The translations under genes and the position numbers were made by a program. The notes below the pieces were generated by a model. That model saw only the letters and a list, made by a program, of their open reading frames with translations, ran no database searches and had not been told where the DNA came from. Shown piece after piece: positions 23,750 to 62,249 of a stretch of 64,000 nt of DNA (its first letter is position 1; the number at the start of each line of letters is the position of its first letter). The DNA comes from Hamiltosporidium tvaerminnensis FI-OER-3-3 (taxonomy: Eukaryota; Fungi; Microsporidia), in the NCBI GenBank assembly GCA_022605425.2, contig CM061246.1, forward strand, positions 806,001-870,000, written 5' to 3'.

Positions 23750-26408
23750 ATTAATACCTCCTCCTCCCCACACACCTCCACCCGCCACATGGTAATGAAA
23801 TGTGGGCTTGACACCTACCTTCGCCTATAACAGTTCCTTCGGTTGAGTCTCTGGTGAGCCATCGTCGACATGAGCCCCTGTACGCTTCCGGGTAACGGCT
23901 TGGTTGCGGACGATTTATTTGTAACAGCCGACCCGAAGGAATGGCCTCAATTTTTGCGTACGACAAGGTTTGAGAATGCCAAGAAATGGCTGGACAGCTT
24001 CCAGGTACTATAATGAGAAATTCGGCTGCACTAACTCTCGTGTTAAAAATTGGCGTGATGGGAGGTAAATCGGAGAATGGGAGCGACGTATGCCCTTGTT
24101 CGCTGATACATGCACCTCCACACCACGGAGTACTAAACCTGAGAACTTGTAATCAAATCTCGATGAATTGTGGTGGTCCAACGAACATCCAATGAATTGG
24201 TTGATGTGTTCTGATCTCATATGTGTCGGTGATATGGGAGCTCATGTACCTGGTATTAGCCGCGTATATCTGCGCTGCGCGGGCTTGACGGCAACCGGAA
24301 AGCCTGATCCGCTTGGAACATGGTAGTTGACTGATCTCCAGGCTCGTGCGGCCCCCTACGCCTGAAATCTGGTATTTAACTTGGTGTATTTTCTGAGGCT
24401 TTGTTAGAAGAATGGTCTTTGAATGTTTCAAAAATGATGCATGGTGGGCTTCAAGATCGTTGTTTTTGGTCGTTTATTGGTTCTGGCGTGTGAATCCGGC
24501 TGGGTGTGTGATGAAATGTGTTCTGGAACAAATGATGACACGCACGATGATTTTTGATTCCATTTGTATCGATATTCGACCCGCCCTTGATGAATTTGTA
24601 ATATCATTATTGGCTCATTAGCTGCTGATTTGGTATAATTTTATTAGAAACTTACACTCTTCCAATATATTTATGATATTGTGAGTTTATGTTTAGGAAC
24701 CTAGTGATTTTTACTGCGGGCTTACGTATTTGATACCAATTCCACGCTCTGACTACGGCCATCACTGTATGTCCAACCTCTTAGTTAACGACTGTGTGTA
24801 AAGTCGTTCATTGAGTGGGGGGTTGCTTGGGAATGGGCGGGGGTGTGGCGGAGGGCTCTCTGATATTGCCTTATAAGTATGGATAATTTGGCAACATGGA
24901 TTGATGTTAAAGCTGATTATAGATCATACTTATTTAACTCAATGCATTGAACCATTTACCTGATGGATCCTAATTTATTAGGTATTATATCAATGGAAAT
25001 TGATATATCATTGGGCCTGAAAATCATGCAGTTGATGATCTGGATGTTTGTCACTGTTATTTGTTTGTGTATGGATCCATTAGGCTTTGAAATACAGTGA
25101 CGCAACGATGTGATCTTTTTCAATCATTCTGTTTATTGATGATCTAGCTCCTTGAACGTCCATTGTGCTTGACGGGGATTTAGGGTGATTGGCTTGATTA
25201 CGTCGCCAATGATACGTGTTGTGAAGATACTGCTATTTCTAAAGGTGTTGTGTTTCAATACTGATTTGGATGTGAATCCCAACACGTGCTCATTTGAAGT
25301 ACGCAAACTTATGGTTGGCTTTGTCCACTGATTAACGAATTTTTTTCTGCACATCACATGGATATCGTTATCACTTCCATGAGTACTTCGACTTGAACCG
25401 CGACTTCTAGTTGATGATGGTGGGACGGTGTTGGTAGAATAGAACATCTCGCGGATGTAGAGCGTTTGTAGCTTCTTGACAGAATTGGGGGCCTCTGTGT
25501 TGTTGAAGGAATATGCTTCTGCAACTCTTGGATTGTCTGGAAGTAAAGACCTATCACTGCGGAGCAATCCTCAGGTGGATAATAATAACCCATCTTGCAC
25601 TAATAAAGGCTTTTAGTGTACGGTTGTGTCACTGGTTTAAGCTCACTTGCAAACTTATAACGAAATAAACGAAACTCCATCAATTATATAATGGGAAAAT
25701 GAGCTTGCGTGTGTTGTTACTCTTCTGGCTGGAAATATGCCACGAATGAAGCTGTGTTCTTCGGATGAAATGTATTCTGGGCGATGGTGTGTATTGTAGT
25801 CTGGTAGACTGTGATCATCGCAACTGATGTGAAAATGTGCTGTACACTGCGGCATATGGTGGTTGATGCCACACCTTCTAAATAGATATAGTTTAGTCTT
25901 AAACGAATGGCCACTCGTTCGATTTTGATAATGGTATGCATGACACCGAATTAAACCGATGTTAATTCGGAAACGACCGGACATATTTATTTTGATAAGA
26001 AGAAGATAGATAACACTCATTAGTAGATCACTCCCGATCACTTCAATAGTTGAACTGAAAACTTAAGTAGACCTGTGCCATGTTGGGTCTTTAATAAGTG
26101 TATTGTTGATAATCCCTTGTGATGACCTGGGACGGTAATGTGACAAATACCTAATCTTCTTAAAGACTAAACCCTAATGGGCATGCTATAGAACGTCAAA
26201 CACTTGATCACGGACTTGCACTAATGCAGCTGGTCATGGTGTTATTATAGACATGCTACAAACCCCTTAAAGCAGATGTGAAATTTAAACCAAAAATACC
26301 TTATTTCAAGAGGAACCACTTTAAGGAACCGACCAAAACATAATGAAGAGTCGATTTAGAAAGACAGGGTGTAGAAACTAAAATGTTAAATTTTATTTAT
26401 TAAATAAA
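23750..26408 (+). mobile_element. Non-LTR retrotransposon of R4/Dong type (RT + REL endonuclease), copy A, riddled with microdeletions
   Basis: Frame-broken CGLTYLIP (~24715), (LF)VCMDPL (~25065), (HL)LFIDDL (~25130) and RPDIFI (~25975). Co-linear with copies B and C; shared AT-rich 3' tail AAAATGTTAAA...TTATTAAATAA. Confidence 0.85.
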
Positions 26409-26944
26409 CATTCAATTAAATTAATGGTTTATATCGTTTGTCGTTTTATATTTCTGTTCATTTTTTAGCCCCCATTTATTTGTATTTTATCCTATTTGGG
26501 TACATTTTATACCAAAATAAAAACATATTTTAAAATTTGTAATAATACACTTGATATATACATTTACTAGATAAATAATAGGGATTATACATCAATTAAT
26601 TTATATATAATTGCTGAAGCCTGAAAGTTAAAAAATATGACTTATATTTAATCAATAAAAATTTGTTATAGATGTAATATTTAAATAATTATTTTTGTGA
26701 TCTCCTTAGATTAAACTTGAAGAAATAGTTGGAAACATCTTAAGAAATTATAGGTATATCAGAATAGAAGTCTATATTCCATCTTTTTCAATCAAAAAAA
26801 TATATTTTGTTTGGTTCTTCAGATGAAGAAATTTTGATTTATAGCTTGATATTAACGTTTAAAGAGTCATTAATACGTTTTTATAATTCATATTTGATGA
26901 ATTAAATTAACGACAAGGGTTTTCAATCATAAAAACTTACTTGT

Positions 26945-29285
26945 TTATTTAATAAAATTCTGGGTTAAATATTTTAACATTTTTATATGTTTTTTCTACC
27001 TTTTAACCACTATTGTTTTTTTCAATCCGACTCTATTTATGTTATGGTGTTGTGGTTCCCCTTGTGAATAAGGGGTGTATTATTTTGGTTTAAATTTTAA
27101 ACATTTCTGTTTTTAAAGGGGTATTGTCTCTGACTCTGATCTCTAATAAACCATGAGTCAGTGGATTTAGTCTGACTAGTCCTCTTGTATCAGAAATTGT
27201 TACTGTTAGTACTATATACTGAATGTATGCTCACATTCATGGTATTTAGTTTTTAGATGAGATTTTGGTATTGTCATACCGTCCGGTCATACAAGGGATT
27301 ATCTCAACTACACCTATAAATAGACCCAACTATGGTAGGGTCTACTCTAGTTTCGTACTATTAGTGAATCTTAGTATTCCTACTATAGTGTTATCTTATT
27401 TTCTTATCTAAAATAAATATGTGGTTGTTAATTTAAATCAGTTTTAATTTGGTGTCCACTTATTCTGCTATATTATAATTTTTGAACTGAGTGGTCTTAT
27501 TCGTTTGAAGACTTAAACTTATATCTATAAGAGAGGGTAGGCATCTGACACTTTATGCCGTTAGTGTAATCATGGCCTAGCATTCGCATCTAGTTGTAGA
27601 TGATCCACAGTCTTACCAGACTTCCCGCATGTTACACACCATCTGCTCCCAATACATTCTATCCTGGATATAGAGAACACAGCTTCATTGGGCCTAATAT
27701 TTCCTCTCTTAGACCTTAAGTACTAACTAAGTTTTTTGATTATATAACTTTGAATGGGTTTCGTTTATTCTTATATGTTTGAGTTAGTTTTTAATTTTTT
27801 GTACTTTTACACCTGTACTTTTTTAGCTTTTATTAGTGAGATGGGTTTATTATTATTTCACTTGGTTGTGTGTTTGATATTTTTTACTAAATCAGTTGGG
27901 CATATGTTGCTTCACCAACACTATGTGGCCTCTTCAGTTCTGTTCTGAAGATACAACCGCTCTTACATCCTGGGCGGAGATGTATCTTATTAACAACACC
28001 GCACGCACTGCATCATCTAACAGAAGTCAGCCGGTTCGTAGTACTCCTATGTGGTAGTTGATTAACGATATCGCATGTTGATTGATTGCGAAATAAATTT
28101 TGCGTTTAATCTGTGTGACAAGTCTTTCACTCTTGATATAAGTTTGTCTGTACTTTTAATGAGCTACGTGTTGGGATTCCTCTGCTATCTTTATTATTCC
28201 TAAATATTTGTAAACACTAACACCTTCTGAAGAGTAGGTATTTAACGTATCATTTGTGGCTGACTCTCTTTGTTAATCTCTAAGCCAATCACCTCTAAAA
28301 TCCTTTGCCTCGCCTGTCATAGACTCATGTGGAGCTGTCTTTGAGAGCTTAGATCATCAATAAACAAGAGATGATTAGTGAATGGGATTCGCATTGTTTG
28401 TACTGTCACTTTGTGTATTTTTCATTAAGCTTTCGGCTAATGGATCCATACACACACAATAACAAGGTGACAGACTATCTCCTTGCGGATCCCTCTATAT
28501 CTTCTTGTATGTTTTTGGCCTACTGATATATATTTTCCATTTGATATAATTACTTAATAAATTTCGGATCCAATCAGGTAATTGGTTAGCATTGAGTTAA
28601 ATAAGATGATCTATTGAATCATAGTTTTTAACATAATCCATGTTGCCTTAGATTGTTTCCGTACTCTTTATTTAAGGCATATTCGTGAGCCTGCTCTTTC
28701 TCCTGCCTCTTACCCTGTTGTTTTGCCCTGCCTTCCCTGTTGACATTTCGTTACCTTTGTCGTTACTTTGTTTTATTGGCCTTTGCCTTTCGTTTTTATA
28801 CGTGCCCGCGTAAACTGCTTGGTTTCCTTCTAATTACTTTCCTTCTAGATATTTGTGTTGTAGTTTCTTATATTGTATACCTATTCCGCGCTTTATTGCA
28901 TTATGATATTCATTCTCGTTGGTCTTTTTGTATGGATTATCTGTCGTACTGTGTTTTTTTTCCCATTTACCACTTTCTCCTACTGCTCATTCCCCGCTCT
29001 ACCCATAATCACCTGTCATCTCTTTTGCTCCCTGCTCGTTTTTTGTAATTCGACTTTTTTTACTGCTGATCGTTTGTTTATTATTTTTTTGGCTTTTTTG
29101 TGTTTTCCTGCTTCGCTGATCTTTGTACTACTTTTTTCTCTTGTTCGCTCTGCTTTTTTGTGTTGCCTCTCGCTCCTGGCGTGCTTTCGCGCTTCCGTAT
29201 TGACTCGCATGTCCTGCATTTCCCACTTTTATCATTTACTATCTTCTTTGTTTTTGTCCCCCTTTCCTTCTTCCTTTCTTTTTTA
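26945..29285 (-). mobile_element. Same R4/Dong-type element, copy B, 5'-truncated, with 23-bp target-site duplication
   Basis: Minus strand reads (frame-broken) QGDSLSP..CMDP..RKLNEKYT..TNHLLFIDDL (28500-28345). Flanked by the perfect direct repeat TTCAATCATAAAAACTTACTTGT at 26922-26944 and 29286-29308; the 3' tail matches copy A. Confidence 0.88.
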
Positions 29286-29545
29286 TTCAATCATAAAAAC
29301 TTACTTGTAATAATCTTAAGAAAGATATTTATAAATTTTTTATTTTATAAAGAATGATTGTAAATATATATAGATGGAAGATTTAACAAATAATCCAGCT
29401 TGAGGAAAATTTTACGGGTTTTCATAATGTGTCTCAATCATAGAATCAATTTTCGTCACATAAAATTAGTTTCAACTTAATATTTTTTTAAGCTTTTTAT
29501 AGTTAAAGCATTGTAAAGAAATTGTAAAATATATCAAAAAAGTTT

Positions 29546-46049: not shown

Positions 46050-46793
46050 ATGTACCAAGAAGAGCCATTTGGCTGCACACATTATAAAAGAAATTGTTTA
46101 ATCGTTGCAGACTGCTGCAAAAGAACTTACCCATGTAGATTCTGTCACGATGATAATGAAGACCATTCTATAAATCGGTACAAAATCAGAGAAATGCTTT
46201 GTTTATACTGTGGTTTGATACAAGAGGTGAGTAATCAGTGCTGCAAATGCAACAAAAAAATGGCCGAATATTTTTGTGCGCAGTGCAAGTTTTGGTCAAA
46301 TTCTACCGAAGAAATATTTCACTGCGCCAAATGCAAAATGTGCCGTATCGGACCACAGAACCGAACATTTCATTGCACTGACTGCAATGCATGTATGAAC
46401 AAAGACCTACACAACAACCACATACACATAGAAAACACTCTTAAAAGTAATTGTCCAATCTGTGCAGAATATATGTTCACCAGTATAAAGAATCTCACTC
46501 TTCTTAACTGTGGACACTCTATACACACAGAATGCTTAGAATATTACATCAAAGGTAGCCATCAGTGCCCAATATGCCTTAAATCTATAGGAGATATGAA
46601 CCTATACAATCAAAAAATAGACTTTATCTTATCAAACAATCTAAAACTTTACAAAGACACAGACATTTGGATGTGTGAGATATCCTGTTTCGATTGCAAA
46701 GAAACATCAAAAAGCTTTTATAGATTTCTTTTCAACAAATGTCAAATTTGCAAGTCTTACAACACACGAACAGGTGATGTTTATAAAGAATAA
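46050..46793 (+). CDS. RCHY1: CHY/CTCHY zinc finger + RING-H2 E3 ubiquitin ligase (Pirh2-like)
   Basis: GCTHYKRNC..ADCC...YPCRFCHD (CHY), FHCAKCKMCRIG, NCPICAEYMF..CGHSIH..C...CPIC (RING-H2), C-terminal C..C...KC..CKSYNT. Confidence 0.92.
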   Translation: MYQEEPFGCTHYKRNCLIVADCCKRTYPCRFCHDDNEDHSINRYKIREMLCLYCGLIQEVSNQCCKCNKKMAEYFCAQCKFWSNSTEEIFHCAKCKMCRIGPQNRTFHCTDCNACMNKDLHNNHIHIENTLKSNCPICAEYMFTSIKNLTLLNCGHSIHTECLEYYIKGSHQCPICLKSIGDMNLYNQKIDFILSNNLKLYKDTDIWMCEISCFDCKETSKSFYRFLFNKCQICKSYNTRTGDVYKE

Positions 46794-47042
46794 TAAACTC
46801 AGACATTTTTTGCTATTTTTAAGTATTCCTCAATCTTTCTTAATACCTTCTAATCATTATCTTAGTACATCATTCTATTCTTTTAAAATATTATTCTCTT
46901 GGTATATTATTCTCTTAGTAGATCATTATCATACCACATCATTCTATTCTCTTAGTATATTATCTTCTTAAAATATTATTCTCTTAACATATTATTATTT
47001 TTAAAATACCTAACCTTAAATTAGTCGATAAAATCCCCTATT

Positions 47043-47088
47043 CTAACCCTAGATATAACCCTAGATATAACCCTAGATATAACCCTAA
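47043..47088. repeat. 12-bp tandem repeat (AACCCTAGATAT)x3.5 upstream of PRP8
   Basis: Seen directly; contains the telomere-like TAACCCTA core. Confidence 0.85.
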
Positions 47089-47174
47089 TAATTCCATATA
47101 TTTAACACCCCCTTTAAAATACTACAATTTACAAAAAAAATACATTTAATTTAAACCCCTCCAAGAAAAAATCA

Positions 47175-50100
47175 ATGCCCAACAAAAACCACCCACTTCC
47201 TCCAGAACATTACCGAAGACTAATAAACCTACCACTTTCATCAAAACACACACTTCCTTCTCTAAAATACCTACCACACTCACTTCTATACCTCTTTAAA
47301 AGTATACCGTTTCCATGGGAAAATATTAAATACGTTAAAGTTCGTTACCACCATAAAAATATATTAACGTTTGTCCAAGACAAAACACGTGTTACTGATT
47401 ATCAAAATAAATGGAAATTTATTTTTAATGAAATTTCTACCAAACAAACCCATATTCTCTCTTTTCCTATTTATGATGATAACCACCCGTTAATCAACTA
47501 TGAAGATATTGTTAACTATCCTTTACCAACACCCTTTAATATCAGTACTAATACAGACAGTAATTATAAGGGTGTTAATGAAAGGGATATAAAGAAGGGT
47601 GTTAACGATAAGAAGATAGTAGAGGGTGTTAACGAAAGGGATATAAAGAAGGGTGTTAATGAAAGGGATATAGAGAAAGGTGTTAATAAGTATAGTAGTT
47701 TAGAGGGTGTTAACGAAAGGGATATAAAGAAGGGTGTTAACGATAAGAAGATAGTAGAGGGTGTTAATAAGTATAGTAATTATAAGGGTGTTAATGATAA
47801 GGATATAGAGAAAGGTGTTAATAACAGTACTAATAAACAACACCATGTTAATAAGACCAACTCTAACCCCACCCTAACCCTAAAAACATGCATAAACAAC
47901 AATACTTCTTACAAATTACAGGGTCATAACTTCCTAAGAAGTAAGAATTCTCTCTTAACAGTAAGAAAACTAAACCTACTAATACCTAACACCCCCTATA
48001 CAAAAAACCCATCCCTTTCCACATATAATTCTCTTCCTATTCAAACTATAAATACTCTTACACACTCATATCATAAAATTGTATATCCATACCTCTACAA
48101 TAATATTTTACCAAATACAAACATTCCACTTGAAAAAATACATCCACAACTCACACACAATACTTGTAATTATAATAACAGTAATAAAGAATATAATTAT
48201 AACTGTAATAATAAAGATAATTATAAAGATAATAAAGATAATTATAACTGTAATGATAAAGAGTTTGAACAGGAAAATAAAAGAATTAAATACAATAATA
48301 ACACTTCATCTGATAAAGAAATTAAATATTTACAACAGCATAAACGCATAAACAGAAATAATACAAAAGAAGAAATAAACAGAGAATGCATAAACAGAAA
48401 TAATATAAAAGAAGAAATAAACAGAGAATGCATAAACAGAGAAGAAATAAAAACCCGCAACCCTCCTAACACATCCAACACATCCAATTCTACTAACACA
48501 TCCAATTCTCCTAACACATCCAATTCTCCTAACACATCCAATTCTCCTAACACATCCAACATATCTAATATTCCCTCTGAAACACCCCTTTTAAAACACC
48601 TCTACACTTACACTACAAACCCCTTAATAACACCTATCTCCCTATCCTTAATAAAACACACCTTAAAAAATAAAAAAGGTAAAAAATCAAATAAAAAAAC
48701 AATAAAACAAATCCTAAAAACAAAATATTTTCACACAACAACACTAGACTGGTTAGAAGTATCACTTTCTACCTTACAACAGTCAAAAAAAATTCTTACA
48801 AATATTTTACGCATAAAAAATATTTCTTACCTTTGCATTGACAATAATTTTAATATAAAACCAACTCGTACATTAACAACAAAAGAACGTAAAAAAAGTA
48901 GACTTGGTTCTTCTTTTCATTTACTTAGAGAAATACTTAAATTACTTAAACATGTCACTGATTTGTTTACTTTATATAGAAGTAATACTATTACATGGTT
49001 AACACTTACTTGTAATATTTATTATGTTTTTAGTCATGTTGGTACACTTACAGGTATTTATAGGTATAAGTATAAAGCTATGAGACAAATAAGAAGATGT
49101 AAGTATTTAAATGCAATAATAAAGGGTATGGTAGGGGGTAGTGTGGTATGGGGTGGGGATAGTAGTAGTGTGGTAGGGGTGGGGATAGTAGTAGTGTGGT
49201 AGGGGGTGTTAGTGATAGTAGTAGTGTGTTAGGGGGTGGTGGGGATAGTAGTAGTAAACAACACCCCTTTAATGACAGTAATAGTAAACAACACCCTGTT
49301 AATAATAATACTAATAATTATCACCCCTTTAATGACAGTAATAGTAAACAACACCCCTTTAATACCGCACCTAATAATTATCACCCTGTTAATAATACAC
49401 CTATTAATTATAACCCTCTTAATACTACTACACCCTCTTTATGGTCTCCTTTGTGGAGAGTATGGTTAGCATTTCTACGTGGTCATACTTCCTTATTATC
49501 CACATACTTATCTAACCTATCCTTACGTATGATAAATGGTAGGAAATATAATAAAAAGAAAATAACAAAACAAAGAATAGAAAGTAATTATGATATTATA
49601 TTACGTAACAGTATTAGAGATACAGTACGTAGATATGTACCACCTGATGTATATACAGAATGTGTTAAGAGTGTATTGTCTTATTATAGTGAAGGATGGA
49701 GGTGTTATAAGAGTAATATTGGGTTTTGTTTAGGGTTAGGTGTTGATAGTATTGTATCTAACCCTAGCCTAACCCTAAATAAATGCATAAACAACTATGA
49801 TAATAGTAAATGCATAAACAACTATGATAATAGTAAATGCATAAACAACTATGATAATAGTAAATACACCTTAACAACTCTATCACCCCCTTTAATAACC
49901 CTGTTATAGATACACACCTTAACAATACTATCACTTCCTTTAACAACTCTATCACCTCCTCTAATAACCCCCTTTATTCTATTATAAATCACTTCTTATC
50001 ACTTAAAGCTATAAATTATTATAATTCAACAGTTAAAACCTATAAAAGAATACTTAACAATAAAAAAGTAGATAAAACAGATATTAAGAAGAATAAAGGT

Positions 50101-53100
50101 AAAATAACAAGGCTTTACCTTAAAAAGGAATTTAACAGACAAAAAATGTATTTAGAAAAAGGACCCTTTATTACAGAAGAAGAGGGTGTTAAGATATACA
50201 AGTTAATGTATGAGTATGTAAGGGGTGTTAATAATAGTAGGGGTTTATGGGGTGTTAATAATAGTAGTAGTGTATTAGAGGGTGTTAGTGATAGTAGGGG
50301 GGTAGAGGGTGTTAATAATAGTACTAATAAACAACAGGGTGTTAACATTAGTACTAATAAACAACACCCCTTTACCGACCCTAACACTAACACTAACACT
50401 AACACTACCACTAACACTACTACTAACACTAACACTACCACTAACACTACCACTAATACTAACCCTAACCCTAACACTAATACTAACACTAATATCCCCT
50501 TCCCTACCTTTAACACTGATACTGACTACAAACTACTATCACTAACACTATCATACATTAAAAACAACTACCCTTTAAACAATAAAGACCAATTATTTAT
50601 ACAAGAATGTATTAACACCCCTGTTAATACACTATCATTAATAAAAAAATCTTTTCTTTTAAAAAGAACATTTACAGATATAAAAATACAATTAACTGAT
50701 ACTTTAACACCCTTTTATACTATAGATTCTATAGATCTTATAACAGATACCTTTTTAGAATATTATTTATGGTATAAAGGGTGTTATTATATACCTGTAT
50801 ATTATAAACCTAGTGATAGTGAAATAATGGGTGTTACAGTACAAAGATACAGTAACACGATAAGTAGCATAGTGTATGGTAATAACGTTAGTGGTAGTGG
50901 TAGTGGTAAGGAATACATAAACAATCTTAGTAAAGACAATTGCATAAACAATCTTAGTAGAGACAAATGCATAAACAATCTTAGTAGAGACAAATGCATA
51001 AACAATCTTAGTAAAGACAAAAGCATAAACAACCTTAGTACAGACAAATGCATAAACAGTGAATGCATAAACAATCTTAGTAGAGACAAATGCATAAACA
51101 ACCTTAGTAGAGACAAATGCATAAACAATCTTAGTACAGACAAATGCATAAACAGTGAATGCATAAACACCAATGACAATACCAATAACAACACTACAAA
51201 TACAAATAACACCAACAACAATAACACCAATACCTATAACTATATCCTTGTTACTTCTACTGTCTCTAATCTTTATAAAAATATAGACTTAACACTTCTT
51301 TATAAATTACTGTTACTTATAATAGATGAAACTCTATGTGATTATATAATAAGTAGGTTAAGATGTACGTTAATATATAAGGATATTAAAGTAGGTGTTA
51401 ATTATGGTGTTATTAAAGGAATACCTTTTAGTTGTTATATTTGTTGTTATTATAGTGTTATTGTTGATATAATGCTTATAGGAATAGAGGGTGTTAATAG
51501 TATGTGTAAGGATAGGGGTATTAGTAATAGAGGTAGTGTTGTAGGGGGTGTTAGTAATAGGGAGTGTATGTTAGAGGGTGTTAGTAATACTAGTGGATTA
51601 GAGGGTGTTAGTAATACTAGTGGAGTAGGGTGTTTAGATGTATTGGTGTTAATATATTAAGGATAGTGTTAGTAATACTAGTGGAGTAGAGGGTGTTAAT
51701 AATAGGGAGTGTATGTTAGAGGGTGTTAATAGTATGTGTAAGGATAGGGGTGTTAGTAATACTAGTGGATTAGAGGGTGTTGGTAAGAGGGATAGTAAGT
51801 TAGAGGGTGTTGGTAGGAGGGATAGTAAGTTAGAGGGTGTTAGTAATACTAGTGGATTAGGGGTTAGTATAATGTAGGTGTTATAGTATGTAAGGATAGG
51901 GTGTTAGTAATACTAGTGGATTAGAGGGTGTTAGTAATAGAGATATTAATGAAGGTGTTAGTAATACATTAGATAAACAACAGGGTGTTAGTAATAATAC
52001 TAATAGCTATCACCCTCTATACAATAATACTAATAGCTATCACCCTCTTAACAACAGTACTACTTATCACCCTCTTAACAACAGTACTACTTATCACCCT
52101 CTTAACAACAGTACTACTTATCACCCTCTTAACAACTATACCAATAGCTATCACCCTCTTAACACTACTAACAACAATACAAACAACAATACCCTTGCTC
52201 ACTACTTAAGATACTTAGATACCTCTTATATATTATTAAGACTATCTGATAATAACATTATAGATTTATTAAGTAATTTAAAAATAAGAAGAAGAATATT
52301 TAAAAATAAATATAATAAAGAATATATCATTAAAGATAAAATATTAACAGCACTTTATATGGAATACAGTAGTAGAGTGTTAAGTAGTGTTTGTAGTATT
52401 AAGAGTAAGGATTTTAGTGTTAGTAAAGGAGAATCATTATATTTCTCAATGGGAGGGTTTAATTGTAAGATAGTAAGGGGTGTTAGTAATAAGGATATGT
52501 TAGAGGGTGTTAATGCTAGTAGGTATATATTAGAGGGTGTTAATGATACGAGTAGAGGACTAGAGGGTGTTAGTAATATGAGTAGTAGGTTAGGTGATAT
52601 AAAGGGTGTTAATGATAAGGGTAGGGGATTAGAGGGTGTTAGTAATAAGGATATGTTAGAGGGTGTTAGTAATACTACTACTGATCAACACCCTTATAGT
52701 ACTAGTACTTATAACCCTCTTAACACCAACACCTACAATCAACACCCTCTTAATCCTAACAATATTAACACCTACAATCAACACCCTCTTAATCCTAACC
52801 CTCTTAATCCTAATAATCAACACCCTCTTAATCCTAACAATATTAACACCTACAATCAACACCCTCTTAATCCTAACAATATTAACACCTACAATCAACA
52901 CCCTGTTAACACCAACACCTACAATCAACACCCTCTTAATCCTAACAATATTAACACCTATAATCCACACCCTCTTAATCCTAATAACTCTAACAATATT
53001 AACAATAATACAGTTATTCTTCCTTCTGGTAATACTCTTGTCTTAACTGTTAGTACTTCTTCTATAAATCTATTAAAATTACAAGTAAACAGACTTTGTA

Positions 53101-56100
53101 TAAGAAGTATAGGAAGTACCTTTATAAAAACAATAAGTAAATGGAATAAAATATTAATTTCATTCCTATGTTATTATAGAGAAGCAGTCACTTGTATTGA
53201 TATTATAAATAAATTAGAAAATAAAATAAAAAGTGTTATTAAGAAAGGAATTAACAGTAAAATGCCTAATAGATTTCCACCTGTTATTTTTTATTCTCCT
53301 TTATATTGTGGAGGTCTTAATATGTATAGTTGTAGTGGATGTGGTGTTAATATACTTAAGTATATTAATTCTTGGAATAAAGAGATTAAAGAAGGAGAAG
53401 AGGCATATAAGGAGATGGAAGGTATAATAAGTAGAAGTGTAAAGGGTTATAATGATATAGGGTATGTAGGGGGTGTTACGTATAAGGAGATAGTAGGGGG
53501 TGTTAATGAAAGGGAGATGGTAGGGGGTGTTAGTAAAAGGGAGGTAGTAGGGGGTGTTAGTAAAAGGGAGATGGTAGGGGGTGTTAGTAAAAGGGAGGTA
53601 GTAGGGGGTGTTAGTAAAAGGGAGATGGTAGGGGGTGTTAATGAAAGGGAGATGGTAGGGGGTGTTAGTAAAAGGGAGGTAGTAGGGGGTGTTAGTAAAA
53701 GGGAGATGGTAGGGGGTGTTAATGAAAGGGAGGTAGTAGGGGGTTATAATGAAAGGGAGATGGTAGGGGGTGTTAGTAAAAGGGAGGTAGTAGGGGGTGT
53801 TAGCAAGGAATATTATAGTAAGGATAGTAGAGGGGGTGTTAATGAAAGGGAGATAGTAGGGGGTGTTAGTAAGGGATATTATAGTAAGGATAGTAGAGGG
53901 GGTGTTAGTAAAAGGGAGGTAGTAGGGGGTGTTAGTAAGGAATATGATACTAGAATTTATAAAGATATAAAAGGTGTTAACATAAGTATTAATGAACAAC
54001 AGGGTGTTAACAACAATACTAATAGATACCCTCTTAACAATACTACTAATACTTATCACCCTCTTAACAATACTACTACTACTTATCACCCTCTTAACAA
54101 CAATACTTATACTTATCACCCTCTTAGTAACACTACTTATACTTATCACCCTCTTAACAATACTAATACTTATCACCCTCTTAGTAACACTACTAATACT
54201 TATCACCCTCTTACCACCTCCCTAACTACCCCTAACCTTCTTAAGTTTAGAGGTAAGTTATCACACCTTTTAAATAAAGGATTACCACGTATTAACACTA
54301 TTTATAACAAAGATAAAGATATAAGGTGTTATGATAAAGGTTATAGAATAAGAGGTATTTATAAGAAATATAATTGTAAATATGATTATTTATATTTTAC
54401 TGATATAAGACATGATGGTAAGATATATGATGTTAGTAGTTATAGTAGTGAATGTGTTATTAAGTTAGGAGGATATAAAGAGATATACAAGCATACCTTA
54501 TACAGTTGTATATTTGGTAGAGATGATAGTAGGGGGTGATAGTGATAGAGGTAGGGATGTAGGGGGTGTTAGAGGTAGGGATGTAGGGGGTGTTAGTAAC
54601 AGAGGTAGTGAGGTAGGGGGTGTTAGTAATAGAGGTAGTGCGGTAGAGGGTGTTAGTAACAGAGGTAGTGAGGTAGGGGGTGATAGTAATAAGGATTTGT
54701 TAGAGGGTGTTAGTAATAGGTATAGTAATATAAAGGGTGTTAGTAATAGTGTAGATGATTATAACCCTGTTAGTAGTAGTACTAGTAATTATAACCCTGT
54801 TAGTAGTAGTACTTGTAATATAAAGGGTGTTAGTAACAGTGTAGATAATTATAACCCTGTTAATAGTATCACTAGTAATTATAACCCTGTTAATAGTAGT
54901 ACTAGTAATATAAAGGGTGTTAGTAATAGTGTAGATGATTATAACCCTGTTAGTAGAATTACGAATAATTATAACCCTGTTAGTAGTAGTACTAGTAATT
55001 ATAACCCTGTTAGTAGTAGTACTAGTAATTATCACCCTGTTAGTAACTGTACTAGTAATTATCACCCTCTTACTACTACTACAAACACCACCCATACTAA
55101 CACCAACAACCATACTATCACCCCCCATACTACCATACCACTTATCTCTTTACATACGTTATCTGCCTTTGAAGAAAGTATGAAATATAAAAAACTAACA
55201 CTAGCACAACAACAAGGTATTAACATATTACCAAATAAAAGATTTATATTCTGGTGGTCACCTACACTTAATAGAAGTAATGTTTACATAGGTTATTGTA
55301 TAGAATTAGAACAAACAGAAATTAAAATGTATGGTAAATTAAATACACTTAAGACATGTTATTTACAAGTATTTAGAAATAGTTTATGGAGTAAAATACA
55401 AAGAAGTATAACAAGAGAAGTAAGTAGATATATGATGGAGGGGTGTGATATGGTGGGGGGTGATGTAGAGGGGGGTGATATGTTGGAAGATATGGTGGGT
55501 TATAATATGGTGGGTGGTAATATGTTGGAGGGTTATAGTAATAGTAATAGTGGTTTTAGTTATAAGAGTAATAGTAATACTAGTAATAGTGGTGTTAGTT
55601 ATAAGAGTAGTAATAGTAACAGTAACACTAGTAATAGTAATAGTAATAACCCTAGTTATACTAGTAACAACACTACTAACAACAATCCTACTAATAATAA
55701 CCCTTCTATTACTATTATTGATAATGACTCTTGTATTGTTGTTAAAAGGGTGTTAAAAGACTTAGAAATAGGATATTATGATACAATAGGGAATAGTGTT
55801 AAGGATAGTGTTAGTAGGGTTAGTAATAAGGATGGTGTTAATGATGGTGTTATTAGTAGGGATAGTGTTAGTAGTAGGGATAATAAGGATTATAAGGATT
55901 ATAAGGATTATAAGGATAATAACGATATTAAGGATAGTGTTATGAATAACCCTAATATACAACCAACACCTAACCATAACCTTATAGATACTAGTAGTAG
56001 TGATACTGTTACTAGTGATACCAACCCTAGTGATAACCTTATAGATACTAACCCTAACCCTAATATATATACAGCTAACCCTAACCCTAATATATATACA

Positions 56101-59100
56101 GCTAACCCTACCCCTAATATATATACAGCTAACCCTAACCCTATAAATACTATTACCTGTAATACCCTTTTAATTAAAGTATTCTTACTATGGGGTGACT
56201 ATGATAATTCTAACATACGTAATTATACATACTATAAGTATAAGACACTAGAGAATAGTGGTATAGGGGGTAGTAGGGGTAGTAGGATAGGGGGTAGGGA
56301 TAAAGGTAATACCAGTAATACTAATAACACATATACTACCACATATACTAACCACACATATACAAACAACACACTAAATAATAACACCCTTTGTCTTGTC
56401 TTGGCTGTTGACTTGTTGTATAACACCTTCTCTTCTTATGGTTATACTAACATTTATATAAAAAATATTTTAAAAAATATAAAAACTATTATTAATAATA
56501 ACAGGTGTATACGTATAATGAAAGAAAGAATAAAAAAGGTGTTAAATATAGGGTTAGAAGTAGAGGAAGGAGTAAAGGGTGTTAATAATATAGAAATATA
56601 TAAATGTGATGTTATTGTTGATGATGAGGGTGTTAATAGGAAAGGTAAAGGGTATGTTGTTATATATATTGTTGGTAAAGGGGTGTTATATGTTATGTGG
56701 GTTAATGGGTGTTATGAGGGTGATATAGGAGAGTATATAGCAAGGGGTGTTATAGGTATAATAGAGAGGGAGTATAATATGTTGGGGGGTGATAGTGAAG
56801 GTATGGATGTTAGTATAGAGGGTAATATAAAGGGTGTTAGTGAAGGGATGGGTAGTGGAAAGCTGGGGGGTGTTAGTAGGTTGGAGGGTAATATAAAGGG
56901 TGTTAGTAGGTTGGAGGGTAATATAAAGGGTGTTAGTAGGTTGGATGGTAATATAAAGGGTGTTAGTAGGTTGGATGGTAATAGTACTAATACCTTACAC
57001 CCTGTTAGTAACAGTACTTATGAACAACCCCCCTTTAGTAATAGTACTAGTATACACCCTGTTAGTAACAGTACTAATACCTTACACCCCTTTAGTAACA
57101 TGTATGCTAATACCTTACACCCTGTTAGTAACAGTACTAATACCTTATCACCCCTTTAGTAACAGTACTAATGAACTACACCCTGTTAGTAACAGTACTT
57201 ATTAACTTACACCCTGTTAGTAATACCAATCCAATACCTAATCATAACCCTATACCTAACCCTAACCCCAACAGTAATAATATTCTTATCTGCTCACTTC
57301 GTAAATCCTTTATGGAGTATTTAAGTGTTATTTGTATGGAAAAAGAAAGATTAGAAATAACAGGGTGTTATAATAATATAAATATACCTTTTAAAATATT
57401 TATAAAAGAATATTTAAAAGAATATTTAAAAGGTGTTAATAAAGAAGGAATATGGAAATGTAATTTATATGACGGATGGGGTGTTATTAGTAAGTATACA
57501 TCATTTTGTAGGTTAATGGTTATTCTTAGAGGAATGCATGTTAATTACAAGGAGAGTAAGAGGGTAATGTATAGTGGTGGTAGAGGGGAGGGTGATAGGG
57601 ATAGTGGTGATATGGATAGTGGTAGAGGGGAGGTGATAGGGATAGTGGTAGAGGGGAGGGTAATATGTAATGGTGGTAGAGGGGAGGGTGATAGGGATAT
57701 GTTAGTAGGTAGTAATAAGGATATAAGTAGTAATAGGGGTAATAAGGGTATAGTGTTACCAAAACCTAACCCTTTATTTAATAGTAGTATTACTAACCCT
57801 TTATTTAATAGTAGTATTACTAACCCTTTATCTAATAGTAGTATTACTAACACCCTATCTACTAACACCCTATCTACTAGTATTATTACTAACACCCTAT
57901 CTACTAACCCTTTATCTACTAACCCTAACCCTAACCCTAATACTACCCCATACCCTTTATCTACTAACATTACATATGTTAATAATATATTTCCTATTCT
58001 TAGTGATTCTGAGTGGATAAAAGTAGAAAAAGAATTAAAAGATATAATTATTAACGATTATAGTGTTAAGAATAGAATAGAAAGTAGTAAATTAACACAT
58101 GGAGAGATAAGGGATATTATATTTGGTATAGAGTTAATTAAAAGGGAGGAAATAATGAAGTGTGGTGATATGGAGATGGGGGGTGGTATTATGGAGGGAG
58201 GTGATAAGAGTATGGGGGAGGGTGGGTATATGGGTGGTGATATAGAGGGGGGTGATCTGGTTGTTAGGGTTAATAATCCTTTTATAGAGACTAACCCTAA
58301 CCCTAACCCTACTGTTTGCATAAATAGAAATGACTTTAATCCTTTTATAGAGACTAACCCTTTAGATAACACTAATCTTTGCATAAATAGAAATGACTTT
58401 AATCCTTTTACAGAGACTGACCCTAACCCTAACCCTAACCCTAACACTAATGTTTGCATAAATAGAAATGACTTTAATCCTTTTACAGAGACTAACCCTT
58501 TAGATAACCCTTTAGATAAGACTAATGTTTGCATAAATAGAAATGACTTTAATCCTTTTATAGAGACTAACCCTTTAGATAACACTAATGTTTGCATAAA
58601 TAGAAATGACTTTAATCCTTTAGATTACACTAATATTTGCATAAATAGAAATGACTTTAATCCTTTAGATAACACTAATAACAATATAAGTACTAACACC
58701 CTTTATACTAACACCCTTTATACTACTAACACCCTCAATACCCTTTATACTAACACCCTTTATACTGTTTTAAGGCTTTGTAATATATATAATAACTATA
58801 GACATGTTATAAGTAAAGAATTACTAATATCATTTATACGTATGACAGATTTGACAGGTGTATTTTATGGGGTGTTAATAGATAATAAGTATGGTAGAGG
58901 TATAGGGGTGTTACCACAGTACTATAATAATAAAAGGCTTTATACTGTAAAAAGTATTAATTTAAAGGGTATTGAGGGTGTTATTGGTGTTAGGGGTGTT
59001 GTTTTTTTTAATGGGTCTTTAGAAGATATTAGGGGTGTTGTTTTAAAGGTGGGTGGGGGTGTTAGAAGTGTGTGGGTTGTTAATGTTATGAAGGATAGGA

Positions 59101-59564
59101 TAGAGTGTTATGAAAGTGAAGGGAGTAATAAGGGGGTAGAGTGCTATGAGAGTGAAGGGAGTAATAAGGGGGTAGAGTGTTATGAGAGTGAAGGGAGTAA
59201 TAAGGGGGTAGAGTGCTATGAGAGTGAAGGGAGTAATAAGGGGGTAGAGGGTGGTGGATTAGAGGGTGGTGGGGATAGTAGGGGTATGTTAGAGGGTGTT
59301 GGGGATAGAGGTAGTAATATAAAGGGTATTAGTAATAGAGGTAGTAATATAAAGGGTGTTAGTAATAGTACCGATAATACTAATAAACAACACCCTGTTA
59401 ATAACATACCATATGAACAACACCCTGTTAATTTAAAGGGTTATTTTCTTGTTTGTGAAATGTGGAATTTTTATTTTAAAAGGGAATGGTTTGATGAAGA
59501 TATGAGTTATAGTCTTAAGATAGGATACCCTTTAAATTTCTATGATATAAGTTTTAGAGAGTAA
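47175..59564 (+). CDS. PRP8: Pre-mRNA splicing factor Prp8, inflated by ~17 low-complexity repeat insertions and split across 6 ORFs by frame breaks inside repeats
   Basis: Co-linear Prp8 motifs: LPPEHYRRLI; LKYLPH..IPFPWE; LDWLEV; KPTRTLTTKERKKSRLG; HVGTLTGIYRYKYKAMRQIR; WRVWLAFLRG; TKQRIESNYD; VDKTDIKKNKGKITRLYLK (unannotated frame ~50065-50125); [93 protein letters not shown]; Jab1/MPN region; C-terminal WNFYF..YSLKIGYPLNFYD. Confidence 0.95.
53484..54210 (+). repeat. Largest PRP8 insert: 27-nt G-arm repeat (REMVGGVSK) followed by ~30-nt C-arm repeat (TYHPLNNTT)
   Basis: AGGGAG(A/G)T(G/A)GTAGGGGGTGTTA(G/A)T(A/G)AA about 12 times, then ACTTATCACCCTCTTA(AC/GT)AA about 6 times. Confidence 0.95.
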
Positions 59565-59713
59565 AGGGGTGTTAATTATAGTCTTAAGATAGGATACCCT
59601 TTAAATTTCTATGATATAAGTTTTAGAGAGTAAAGGGGTGTTATTTATAGTTTTAAGATAGGATACCCTTTAAATTTCTATGATATAAGTTTTAAAGAGT
59701 AAAGGGGTGTTAA
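59507..59713 (+). repeat. Triplication (69-nt period) of the PRP8 C-terminal codons plus stop
   Basis: GT(C/T)TTAAGATAGGATACCCTTTAAATTTCTATGATATAAGTTTTA(G/A)AGAGTAAAGGGGTGTTA starts at 59512, 59581 and 59650. Confidence 0.95.
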
Positions 59714-59799
59714 TTATAATAAAGAATATTTAATTTAAATTTCTATGAAGTTCTTGTATTTTTCAGTGTTATTCTTTCAATTTGATATGTATTTATAGA

Positions 59800-60580
59800 A
59801 TTAAAACCCTTTAATTACTAGCAGTATGTTTAAACCCTTTAATTACTAAAGTACTGTATTTTTATTAAACCCCTTTTATTACTAGCCCTATAGTATAACA
59901 CCCATAAAATTCAAGTAGAATGTTTAAAACCCTTTAATTATTAGTACTATAGTATAACACCCTTTAATTACTAGAAGTTTGTTTAAACCCTTTAATTATT
60001 AGTACTATAGTATAACACCCTTTAATTACTACCACTATAGTTTAACACCCTTTAATTACTAGTAGTATGTTTATCACTCTAATTATTAGTACTATAGTAT
60101 AACACCCTTTAATTACTAGTAGTATGTTTATCACTCTAATTATTAGTACTATAGTATAACACCCATAAAATCCAAGTAGTATGTTTATCACCCTTTAATT
60201 ATTAGTACTATAGTATAACACCCTTTAATTACTAGAAGTTTGTTTAAACCCTTTAATTACTACTACTATAGTTTAACACCCTTTAATTACTAGTAGTATG
60301 TTTATCACACTCTAATATTTATATCCCTCTATAACTCTAACCCTTATACCCCTTTATTAACACCTATTACATTTTTATATCCCTAACACCCTTATATCCC
60401 CTAACACTATAACTCCTATATCCTATCACCCTTTATCCCTTATTATACCCCTGTTACATTTTTATATCTCTAACACCCTTTATATCCTCTAACACCCTCT
60501 ATATCACTATCACCCTTATATCTCCTTAACACCCTCTATATCCCCTTTATCCATTCTATATCCCACTATCACCCTTTTAC
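59800..60580. repeat. C-rich minisatellite array 5' of EAF6
   Basis: Repeated AGTACTATAGTATAACACCC / (AA/AC)ACCCTTTAATTAC units, grading into CCCTT(T)ATATCCC units. Confidence 0.9.
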
Positions 60581-60583
60581 TAA

Positions 60584-60835
60584 ATGGAGAACAGAAGAGA
60601 CAACATGAAACAACTACAACAGTACATACGTAAAAGAAAGGAATTACAAAGAAGTGTATGTAATTATGAGAAAGAGATATTTAGATTAGAAACATTATTT
60701 TTAGATATGACACAAGGATTCCCAGTTACTAAGAATTTAGATTATTATTTAAATTTTAAAGTAGAAAAGAAGAAAGGATATAATAAAGATAAAGATAGGA
60801 TATTTAGTAGGAATATACCTAGGATTAACGAGTAG
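60584..60835 (+). CDS. EAF6: NuA4/MOZ histone acetyltransferase complex subunit Eaf6
   Basis: LQQYIRKRKELQRSVCNYEKEIFRLETLFLDMT....KNLDYYL......DKDRIFS matches Eaf6 (L..RK..L...L..LE.QIY..E..YL..T..GN...G.D.YL....DRLFS). Confidence 0.85.
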   Translation: MENRRDNMKQLQQYIRKRKELQRSVCNYEKEIFRLETLFLDMTQGFPVTKNLDYYLNFKVEKKKGYNKDKDRIFSRNIPRINE

Positions 60836-62000
60836 GGGATATGGGGGTGGGGGGGTAGTGAGTAGAGGGATATAGTAAGTAGTTATAGTAAGTAGAGGAT
60901 ATAGTAACGGGTTATAGTAAGTAGTTATAGTAAGTAGAGGGATAGTAAGTAGAGGTTATAGTAAGTAGTTATAGTAAGTAGTTATAGTAAGTAGAGGGAT
61001 AGTAAGTAGAGGTTATAGTAAGTAGTTATAGTAAGTAGTTATAGTAAGTAGAGGGATAGTAAGTAGAGGGATAGTAAGTAGAGGTTATAGTATTTAAAGG
61101 GTGTAATTTAAAGGGTTTTTATTCATCGGTTTTAAAGGTATTTTATTGTAATTAAAGGCTTTAGTATTTTATTGTAATTAAAGGGGTGTAATTTAAAGGG
61201 TTATTATAATATGAGTTTTAAAGGTATTTTATTGTAATTAAAGGGGTGTAATTTAAAGGCTTTAGTATTTTATTGTAATTAAAGGGTGTAATTTAAAGGG
61301 TTATTATAATATGGGTTTTAAAGGTATTTTATTGTAATTAAAGGGGTGTAATTTAAAGGGTTTAGTTTTTTATTGTAATTAAAGGGTTTGGTATTTTATT
61401 GTAATTAAAGGGGTGTAATTTAAAGGGTTATTATAATATGGGTTTTAAAGGTTATTATAATTAAAGGGGTGTAATTTAAAGGGTTTAGTATTTTATTGTA
61501 ATTAAAGGGTTTGGTATTTTAATGTAATTAAAGGGTGTAATTTAAAGGGTTATTATAATATGAGTTTTAAAGGTATTTTATTGTAATTAAAGGGTGTAAT
61601 TTAAGGGTTTAGTATTTTATTGTAATTAAAGGGTTTGGTATTTTAATGTAATTAAAGGGTGTAATTTAAAGGGTTATTATAATATGGGTTTTAAAGGTAT
61701 TTTAAGTTTGTGTAAATATTATAAACCTTGTGTGTTTTAAAGTGAGATTTATAAGTTGTATTAATAGAATTAAGAGAGTGTTATAGATATATAGTGTGTT
61801 ATAGATATAGAGAGTGTATTATAAATAATAAGGTGATTAAAGAAAGAATATATTTATAAGTTGTTGTATTATAATATAGAGAGTGTGTTATAAACCTGGT
61901 GTTTTAAGTTAAGTGTTTACTTTTATAGATAGAGAGTGTGTTATAAATATATAGTGTGTTATAGATAATAAGAGTGTGTTATAGTTATAAGAGTGTGTTA
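60836..62000. repeat. G-rich minisatellite arrays 3' of EAF6
   Basis: TAGTAAGTAG(TTA/AGGGA/AGGTTA) units (60870-61090), then GTAATTAAAGGG(G)TGTAATTTAAAGGGTT units (61090-61700), then AGAGTGTGTTATAG units. Confidence 0.9.
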
Positions 62001-62249
62001 TAGATATTTTGAAGAAGAAAATGGTTTTATTGGAAATAACAGTTTATTTTTAAGTGGAATATGTGGAGTTTTAAGAATATTATTGATAAGTCAAGCATTT
62101 AAAAGTGAATGTATTTTAAGATTTAATTTTATTTAGATGTTTTTATTAGGAGTTTTGAAGGGGGTGGATTTTTTTTAGAAGTATCTATGTGGAGCATAGT
62201 ATGTCAAAGTTATTATTATTTACTTCTCGTTTAGTCGGATTTTGTTTTT

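What the first reader, a model, noticed from the sequence alone, without database searches (positions are those of the whole stretch)
46800..62000. A bounded ~15-kb domain with oscillating GC skew (~0.7-kb period) that overrides coding constraint
Seen: from the end of RCHY1 to ~62000 the + strand cycles C/A-rich, then T-rich, then G-rich, then C-rich again, roughly once per insert. The wave runs through the conserved Prp8 blocks too (e.g. 48590-48780 C/A-rich, 48900-49070 T-rich, then G-rich), through EAF6 and through intergenic DNA. Amino-acid usage follows it (P/T/H/N versus G/V/R/E). Genes outside the domain (RPC2, AMD1, ATM1) show nothing comparable. Inference: the inserts are a property of the chromosomal region rather than of PRP8. 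Candidates are a distinct chromatin, replication or repair compartment (e.g. phased break or origin sites with strand-asymmetric mutation).
Basis: partly seen in the sequence, partly recalled or inferred. Interest (0 to 1): 0.82.

Follow-up and report, generated by a model that had tools for sequence, protein, structure and literature searches.

The report
Sawtooth strand-bias domains in microsporidian genes
In a fungus-like parasite of water fleas, patches of essential genes carry a repeating G-rich/C-rich wave built on the organism's own promoter word; the wave more than doubles the length of the splicing gene PRP8 and rewrites its conserved sequence, pointing to an undescribed local mutation process.

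Summary
Real, not an assembly artefact. The window is Hamiltosporidium tvaerminnensis (G000:C1). From ~46.0k to 62.2k the G-C skew is a sawtooth: 18 G-to-C switches, all but the last (intergenic) inside a low-complexity PRP8 insert, with C-to-G ramps across the conserved blocks between. Spacing is quasi-regular (median 622 bp, CV 0.40), not a true period. The ramp survives repeat masking and holds at synonymous sites (OR 6.5, p 3e-11), fading 100-150 bp from insert edges. The oriented word GGTGTT/AACACC is about threefold enriched inside conserved blocks, so it arises by substitution as well as insertion. Its C form matches the ACCC element upstream of ordinary genes here. Similar domains occur on all 17 contigs (~15 on C1), at housekeeping genes, and mostly start C-rich and end G-rich. 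PRP8 is single-copy, under purifying selection, with inserts still changing length in multiples of three. Best reading (0.4): runaway back-to-back promoter-element arrays with initiation-linked strand-biased mutation, an extreme intragenic form of the known fungal 5'-C/3'-G skew; replication and break models remain open. The scan noted this before on other DNA of this genome; I found no paper describing the skew.

The parts
46050..62200 (.). Whole sawtooth GC-skew domain; starts C-rich, ends G-rich; GC 31% vs 27.5% outside
46050..46793 (+). RCHY1-like CHY/RING gene; no inserts but C-biased third positions throughout (G3/C3 14/69), so inside the field
46800..47174 (+). C-rich upstream arm of PRP8 with short TAACCC-type tandem and an ACCC element ~20 nt before the ATG; no G arm partner
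47175..59564 (+). PRP8, only copy in the genome; about 5.07 kb of conserved blocks (PRO8NT, PROCN, RRM_4, U5, U6, domain IV, PROCT) and about 59% insert; five frame breaks in the assembly, all inside inserts
47535..59435 (+). 17 in-frame low-complexity inserts (129-804 bp), mostly a G arm (GGGTGTTA core, 27/30-bp tandem units) followed by a C arm (ACACCC core); G-to-C switches at about 47828, 48448, 49256, 49755, 50348, 50913, 52000, 52671, 54008, 55024, 55646, 55946, 56308, 56985, 57756, 58280, 59369
54184..54637 (+). Frame break near 54536; contigs of three other runs differ here by net 8, 16 and 8 nt, which would keep the frame open, so probably an assembly error
59565..60583 (.). Intergenic junction: G-biased triplicated PRP8 end (69-bp unit), switch near 59800, then a C arm of 30/57-bp units up to the EAF6 promoter
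60584..60835 (+). EAF6 (NuA4 subunit), forms one C-to-G ramp
60836..62200 (.). Terminal G arm (13-, 26-, 124-, 18-bp tandem units), fades out with no C partner

Best explanation
A self-reinforcing, non-adaptive mutational regime confined to 3-16 kb patches of housekeeping genes. Shown: (a) G-arm/C-arm arrays built on one core word sit in protein loops and intergenic gaps and keep changing copy number; (b) next to each arm, substitutions are strand-biased for about 100-150 bp and create new copies of the word in the same orientation, even in conserved coding sequence; (c) the C form of the word is the element found just upstream of ordinary genes. Inferred: each G|C array is a back-to-back cluster of promoter elements that opens chromatin and starts transcription both ways; initiation-linked damage or repair makes the sense strand C/A-rich near each start (as known for fungal 5' ends), which makes more elements; slippage and hairpin template switching (GGG/CCC flips) amplify them where protein or intergenic space tolerates it. 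Each conserved block then looks like a small gene with a C-rich start and a G-rich end, and the 300-bp block length is about twice the reach of the bias. Weak selection in this mixed-transmission parasite lets it fix in Prp8.
For: Synonymous ramp p 3e-11 decaying with distance from inserts. Oriented hexamer in conserved blocks 32 vs 9.5 expected (PRP8/EAF6) and 21 vs 7.3 (RPA2), controls 5 vs 2.7. CCC within 30 nt of the ATG in 11 of 41 non-domain ORFs vs 0 in a control window further upstream, RPC2 included; microsporidian CCC/ACCC promoter element in PMC2803860 and PMC11592040. Fungal genes are C-biased at 5' and G-biased at 3' ends, affecting amino acids and flanks (PMC3315797). Intergenic gaps in L026 show G arm then C arm whatever the gene orientation; outer edges are one-armed. 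Block lengths more regular than random (CV 0.37, p about 5e-5 against an exponential with a 60-bp floor). GGG/CCC switch en bloc: 116/88/1 mixed. In-domain indels between strains 27, 12, 27, 138, 9, 6, 60, 72, 63 nt vs only 1-nt indels outside.
Against: No RNA evidence: no RNA run held the stretch, so internal or antisense starts are untested. Ordinary genes here show no 5'-C/3'-G gradient, and many housekeeping genes with the element (RPC2, ATM1, AMD1) are untouched; the trigger is unexplained. RCHY1 has no G-rich 3' end, and some flanking genes (forkhead gene, L026 gene at 1892, L027 kinase) are G-rich from their 5' ends, which fits a region-centred C-left/G-right field better than a gene-centred one. 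Polarised SNP counts were too few to show the mutation spectrum.
Confidence: 0.4

Rival explanations
1. Replication-linked: domains are initiation or stalling zones; arrays act as origins (yeast polarity, leading strand C/A-rich) or as polar fork barriers (bacterial polarity with dispersed starts), and strand-biased errors plus fork-restart duplications build the wave.
For: Sharp G-to-C jump with a linear ramp is the shape of yeast inter-origin skew (PMC3459929). About 15 domains per 2 Mb is origin-like spacing. Region-centred C-left/G-right tilt regardless of gene strand. MCM genes are duplicated (11 matches).
Against: Known origin skew jumps are about 9% and decay over about 20 kb; here the amplitude is about 150 points and reach 0.1-1 kb. 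Origins every 0.6 kb are implausible. Outer arms are missing.
Confidence: 0.22
2. Recombination or break hot domains: breaks at the open arrays, with single-strand deamination, error-prone gap filling and biased conversion giving the skew, raised GC and duplications.
For: G/T-left, C/A-right at a switch is what 3' overhang deamination gives (established knowledge); both A-to-G gain and C loss are seen; GC is raised; a Y-family polymerase, MutS homologues and a weak Spo11-like match exist.
Against: Symmetric resection predicts G-rich left and C-rich right outer edges; observed edges are opposite. SNP density in unmasked domain DNA is not raised.
Confidence: 0.15
3. Dispersed centromere units (poly- or holocentric), each with a Candida-like C-to-G skew dipole.
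For: Candida centromeres show a large (74%) negative-to-positive skew limited to about 3 kb with raised GC, not due to replication (PMC2924309, PMC3459929). No centromere has been found in these genomes and holocentricity was suggested (PMC12449221).
Against: Domains lie on essential transcribed genes; internal resets at every insert have no centromeric precedent.
Confidence: 0.09
4. Plain minisatellite or mobile-element invasion; flanking skew is only decayed repeat sequence or local conversion from the arrays.
For: Shared core and 27/30-bp units; inserts 65-71% alike over hundreds of bp; one C arm is 81% complementary to a stretch inside a conserved block, hinting at templated conversion.
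Against: No terminal repeats or long identity (longest shared exact word 28 nt); bias present in insert-free RCHY1 and at synonymous sites of alignable blocks; no reason for fixed G-then-C order (297 vs 69 pattern hits, about a third of the former being an unrelated retroelement word).
Confidence: 0.09
5. Telomerase adds TTAGGG-type repeats at internal breaks, followed by end joining.
For: Telomere is TTAGGG, TERT present, polarity matches head-to-head fusion, a few literal CCCTAA runs.
Against: The enriched word is GGGTGTTA; telomere words GGTT and TTAGG are not enriched (o/e 0.6-1.2 and 0.7-1.7); does not explain synonymous ramps.
Confidence: 0.05

Closest known systems
Opposite GC skews at 5' and 3' gene ends in unicellular fungi (McLean and Tirosh 2011, PMC3315797)
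   Same: C-rich start, G-rich end on the coding strand; affects fourfold sites, amino-acid use and flanks; mechanism unknown, probably transcription-linked.
   Different: There one ramp per gene, modest, in many genes; here near-saturating, reset about 17 times inside one gene, confined to a minority of loci, absent from ordinary genes, and tied to expanding arrays and one core word.
Microsporidian CCC/ACCC core promoter element (PMC2803860, PMC11592040)
   Same: C-arm core equals the word found just upstream of ordinary start codons in this genome.
   Different: Normally a single copy per gene; here hundreds of oriented copies inside coding and intergenic DNA, on both strands.
Asn-rich in-frame expansions in Hamiltosporidium MCM proteins (Haag et al. 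2020, PMC6944219)
   Same: Probably the same inserts, noted at protein level.
   Different: Reported for MCM only and suggested to be inteins or variable loops; no skew, polarity, core word, domain structure or effect on conserved blocks described.
Candida albicans centromeric skew dipole (PMC2924309, PMC3459929)
   Same: Large C-to-G skew over a few kb, raised GC, not explained by ordinary replication.
   Different: One per chromosome, gene-free, no internal sawtooth.
Replication-associated skew in yeasts and human N-domains (PMC3459929)
   Same: Sawtooth shape; yeast sign of the jump matches.
   Different: Tens to hundreds of kb wavelength and about 9% amplitude versus 0.6 kb and near-complete bias.
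Interstitial telomeric sequences (PMC8537989, abstract only)
   Same: G-strand polarity, a few TAACCC runs.
   Different: Core word is not the telomere repeat.

Membership tests
Fungal 5'-C/3'-G gene skew | Coding strand C-biased at 5' end, G-biased at 3' end, including third positions and flanks | tested here: met
   PRP8, EAF6, RPA2, IleRS, PI4K, UBA1, RPL7A
Fungal 5'-C/3'-G gene skew | One ramp per transcription unit, general across genes | tested here: not met
   About 18 ramps in PRP8; non-domain ORFs flat
Microsporidian CCC promoter element | CCC word within about 30 nt of the ATG | tested here: met
   11 of 41 non-domain ORFs vs 0 further upstream; also PRP8, EAF6, RPA2
Microsporidian CCC promoter element | Array copies direct transcription starts | not testable with these tools
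   No RNA run held the stretch
Replication origin skew | Jump of about 10% decaying over tens of kb | tested here: not met
   Amplitude -0.79 to +0.76, reach 0.1-1 kb
Replication origin skew | ORC/MCM binding, fork-direction switch | not testable with these tools
   needs experiment
Regional centromere with skew | One per chromosome, gene-free | tested here: not met
   About 15 clusters on C1, on essential genes
Regional centromere with skew | CENP-A occupancy | not testable with these tools
   needs experiment
Interstitial telomeric sequence | Arrays of the species' telomere repeat | tested here: not met
   GGTT and TTAGG not enriched; only a few short runs
MITE or other mobile element | Terminal inverted repeats and near-identical dispersed copies | tested here: not met
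   Inverted arms at most 56 nt at 70-83%; inserts 65-71% alike
Intein | Hint domain and splice-junction residues | tested here: not met
   No Hint family in the Pfam scan of six Prp8 pieces; inserts are low-complexity and length-variable
Spliceosomal intron | Removed from RNA; GT-AG ends | tested here: inconclusive
   Inserts keep frame and vary in multiples of three, confirmed introns here average 28 bp; no RNA laid

The most novel reading that the evidence does not exclude
A self-organising mutational pattern: a cis element (the core promoter word, or a fork or kinetochore signal) biases mutation around itself so as to create more oriented copies, producing about 150 domains with a 300-bp constrained-block wavelength that rewrites essential proteins against selection; the arrays would mark the so far unmapped initiation sites, origins or centromere units of a microsporidian.
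Probability: 0.3. Interest if true: 0.88.

Novelty: new variant of a known kind. Interest (0 to 1): 0.7.

Why it matters
The cause of the fungal 5'-C/3'-G skew is unresolved; this genome offers an extreme, sharply mapped version with affected and unaffected housekeeping genes side by side and many resequenced isolates, so the mutation spectrum, TSS, origin, break and CENP-A maps can be tested against predicted coordinates. It shows mutation pressure strong enough to give a single-copy Prp8 gene that is about 59% insert and to plant a DNA word in conserved codons, a concrete mechanism for non-adaptive genome growth in large microsporidian genomes. Practically, it explains false introns, fragmented gene models, frame errors and composition-biased phylogenetic signal in Hamiltosporidium annotations.

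Tried and rejected
Assembly artefact: rejected, contigs of four short-read runs cover blocks and insert edges, and independent assemblies of other strains show the same architecture at RPA2. True periodicity: rejected. Protein-level cause: rejected by synonymous sites and intergenic arms. PRP8 pseudogene: unlikely (single copy; 8 of 14 listed block SNPs synonymous; frame break near 54536 probably an assembly error; the other four breaks were not resolved). Telomerase templating, MITE, intein: see membership tests. Relatives outside Hamiltosporidium: word search with an insert-rich Prp8 piece returned only Hamiltosporidium proteins (length window and top-8000 limits apply); RPA2 of other microsporidia is 1027-1197 aa with no such grammar; metagenome scan and Atlas search with insert peptides blank; these blanks do not prove absence. 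Rfam blank. Polarised mutation spectrum inconclusive. C arm as inversion versus direct G/C swap of the G arm: tie (106 vs 106 shared 7-mers). The joined, read-through Prp8 was not searched; pieces were searched apart. The large representative-protein search was not used.
Full report
Identity. The genome has 21,638,905 bases in 17 contigs and the window is C1:806001-870000. This matches the Hamiltosporidium tvaerminnensis assembly of Angst et al. 2023 (21.64 Mb, 17 contigs, TTAGGG telomeres; PMC10542269), and all proteins sharing the insert peptides are labelled Hamiltosporidium. The domain lies mid-contig; the right telomere is at 1.97 Mb.

Observation. Between about 46.0k and 62.2k the G-C profile swings with SD 0.233 versus 0.06-0.08 elsewhere, and 400-1200 bp power is 40 times background versus 1.5. 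There are 18 G-to-C switches, spaced 300-1337 bp, median 622, CV 0.40; there is no sharp spectral line, so quasi-regular is the right word. With tandem repeats masked, the remaining bases still ramp from skew -0.79 to +0.76 between switches. An A excess follows each switch; a separate T phase is weak. A crude test of transition sharpness was not significant.

Anatomy. PRP8 spans 47175-59564 in six overlapping frames that carry the Prp8 Pfam domains in order. About 5.07 kb is conserved blocks (boundaries set by hand) and 59% is 17 inserts. Most inserts are a G arm of 27/30-bp units with core GGGTGTTA followed by a C arm with core ACACCC; the central triplet is GGG or CCC, almost never mixed (116/88/1), as expected from hairpin-loop inversion (inference). 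Arms are not long inverted duplications and inserts share only 65-71% identity, so this is a shared grammar, not a transposon. EAF6 forms one more ramp; the domain starts with an unpaired C arm and ends with an unpaired G arm.

The bias acts on conserved sequence. Synonymous C,G counts are 86,33 in the first 40% of blocks and 33,82 in the last 40% (p 3e-11), through both gain of G at twofold sites and loss of C, and mirror-wise. The effect fades 100-150 bp from insert edges. The hexamer GGTGTT or its complement occurs 32 times inside blocks against 9.5 in synonymous shuffles that keep position-specific codon pools, mostly G form late and C form early; RPA2 gives 21 versus 7.3, control genes 5 versus 2.7. 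So the word is created in place by substitution. Block lengths (mean 300 bp, CV 0.37) are more even than random, though protein structure also limits them: several RPA2 insert sites coincide with variable loops of other microsporidia.

It is real and alive. Contigs of four short-read runs cover blocks and insert edges with few differences, and show length differences in the arrays. Across the frame break near 54536 three runs differ by net 8, 16 and 8 nt, which would keep the frame open, so that break is probably an assembly error; the other four were not resolved. PRP8 is single-copy, introns are spliced in this species, and 8 of 14 listed block SNPs are synonymous. At the RPA2 locus, strains differ inside the domain by 27, 12, 27, 138, 9, 6, 60, 72 and 63 nt and outside only by single bases, while SNP density in unmasked DNA is not raised.

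Genome-wide. A 12-letter core pattern has 1184 hits against 4 for its reversed control, in about 15 clusters on C1; clusters occur on all 17 contigs, so roughly 150 domains (extrapolation). In an unbiased 200 kb there are three domains, about 8% of the DNA, on IleRS/CEF1, a forkhead gene and PI4-kinase. Other affected genes seen here: RPA2, a WD40 gene, Sec7, UBA1, importin alpha, RPL7A, a sugar transporter, and at protein level midasin-like AAA ATPase, TAF2, Vps13 and a helicase. Intergenic gaps inside domains show G arm then C arm whatever the gene orientation. Where an outer edge was seen, the left was C-rich and the right G-rich.

Mechanism. The edge polarity argues against symmetric break resection. 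Amplitude and reach argue against ordinary origin skew (PMC3459929). The telomere repeat is not the enriched word. The C-arm core matches the ACCC element just upstream of ordinary genes here and in other microsporidia (PMC2803860, PMC11592040), and fungi have a known C-rich 5' and G-rich 3' gene skew (PMC3315797). I was led to these two by an earlier scan note (s1-599502) and tested them. I therefore favour back-to-back promoter-element arrays that start transcription or open chromatin both ways, bias nearby mutation toward more elements, and expand by slippage where tolerated (0.4). Every step from array to initiation to mutation is inferred. Against it: ordinary genes lack the gradient, the trigger is unknown, and several flanking genes fit a region-centred C-left/G-right field better, which keeps replication (0.22), break/recombination (0.15) and centromere-unit (0.09) readings open.

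Prior knowledge and novelty. Haag et al. 2020 noted Asn-rich in-frame expansions in MCM proteins only; the 2023 and 2025 genome papers report no skew in the parts read or term-searched, and paper searches found nothing on it; the library lacks most subscription journals. The scan itself has noted the pattern at many other loci of this genome. RPA2 orthologues of other microsporidia lack this grammar. Verdict: real, new variant of a known kind, mechanism open, interest 0.7.

Limits. The joined Prp8 was not searched. No RNA data could be laid.

Noticed in passing
window 59507-59718: The last codons and stop of PRP8 are triplicated as a 69-bp unit at 97% identity: a very recent expansion.
   Followed up: no
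window 58710-58762 and 58948-59000: A C-arm array is 81% complementary to 53 nt inside the next conserved block, hinting at templated conversion between array and coding sequence.
   Followed up: no
window 48345-48450, 49780-49865, 50912-51170, 58300-58680: A second, skew-neutral repeated word (peptide CIN) recurs in several inserts.
   Followed up: no
G000:C4:420294-420659: The TERT gene lies next to core-motif hits at C4:421.7k-431k, so it may itself sit in a domain.
   Followed up: partly
G000 C3:471k/502k and C13:512k/530k/548k: MCM-family genes occur as duplicate and triplicate copies with identical scores (11 matches in all).
   Followed up: no
many places, e.g. G000:C1:1054336: A multi-copy element, probably a retroelement, contains both forms of the core word 28 nt apart; likely coincidence, but it makes up about a third of the G-then-C pattern hits.
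   Followed up: no
window 24000-29500: GC-rich (up to 47%) and T-skewed stretch with only short ORFs; probably decayed transposable-element DNA.
   Followed up: partly
L010, G000:C1:1144146-1145900: A gene outside any motif cluster has C-biased third positions (56 G, 107 C); possible early or relic domain.
   Followed up: no
L021 13980-14500 (WD40 gene): A 72-bp unit that holds one G-form and one C-form core is tandemly amplified and differs in copy number between strains.
   Followed up: partly
proteins P0046, P0048, P0064: RPA2 of Conglomerata, Binucleata and Edhazardia have their own Asn-rich inserts at some of the same loops, without the G-arm/C-arm grammar.
   Followed up: partly
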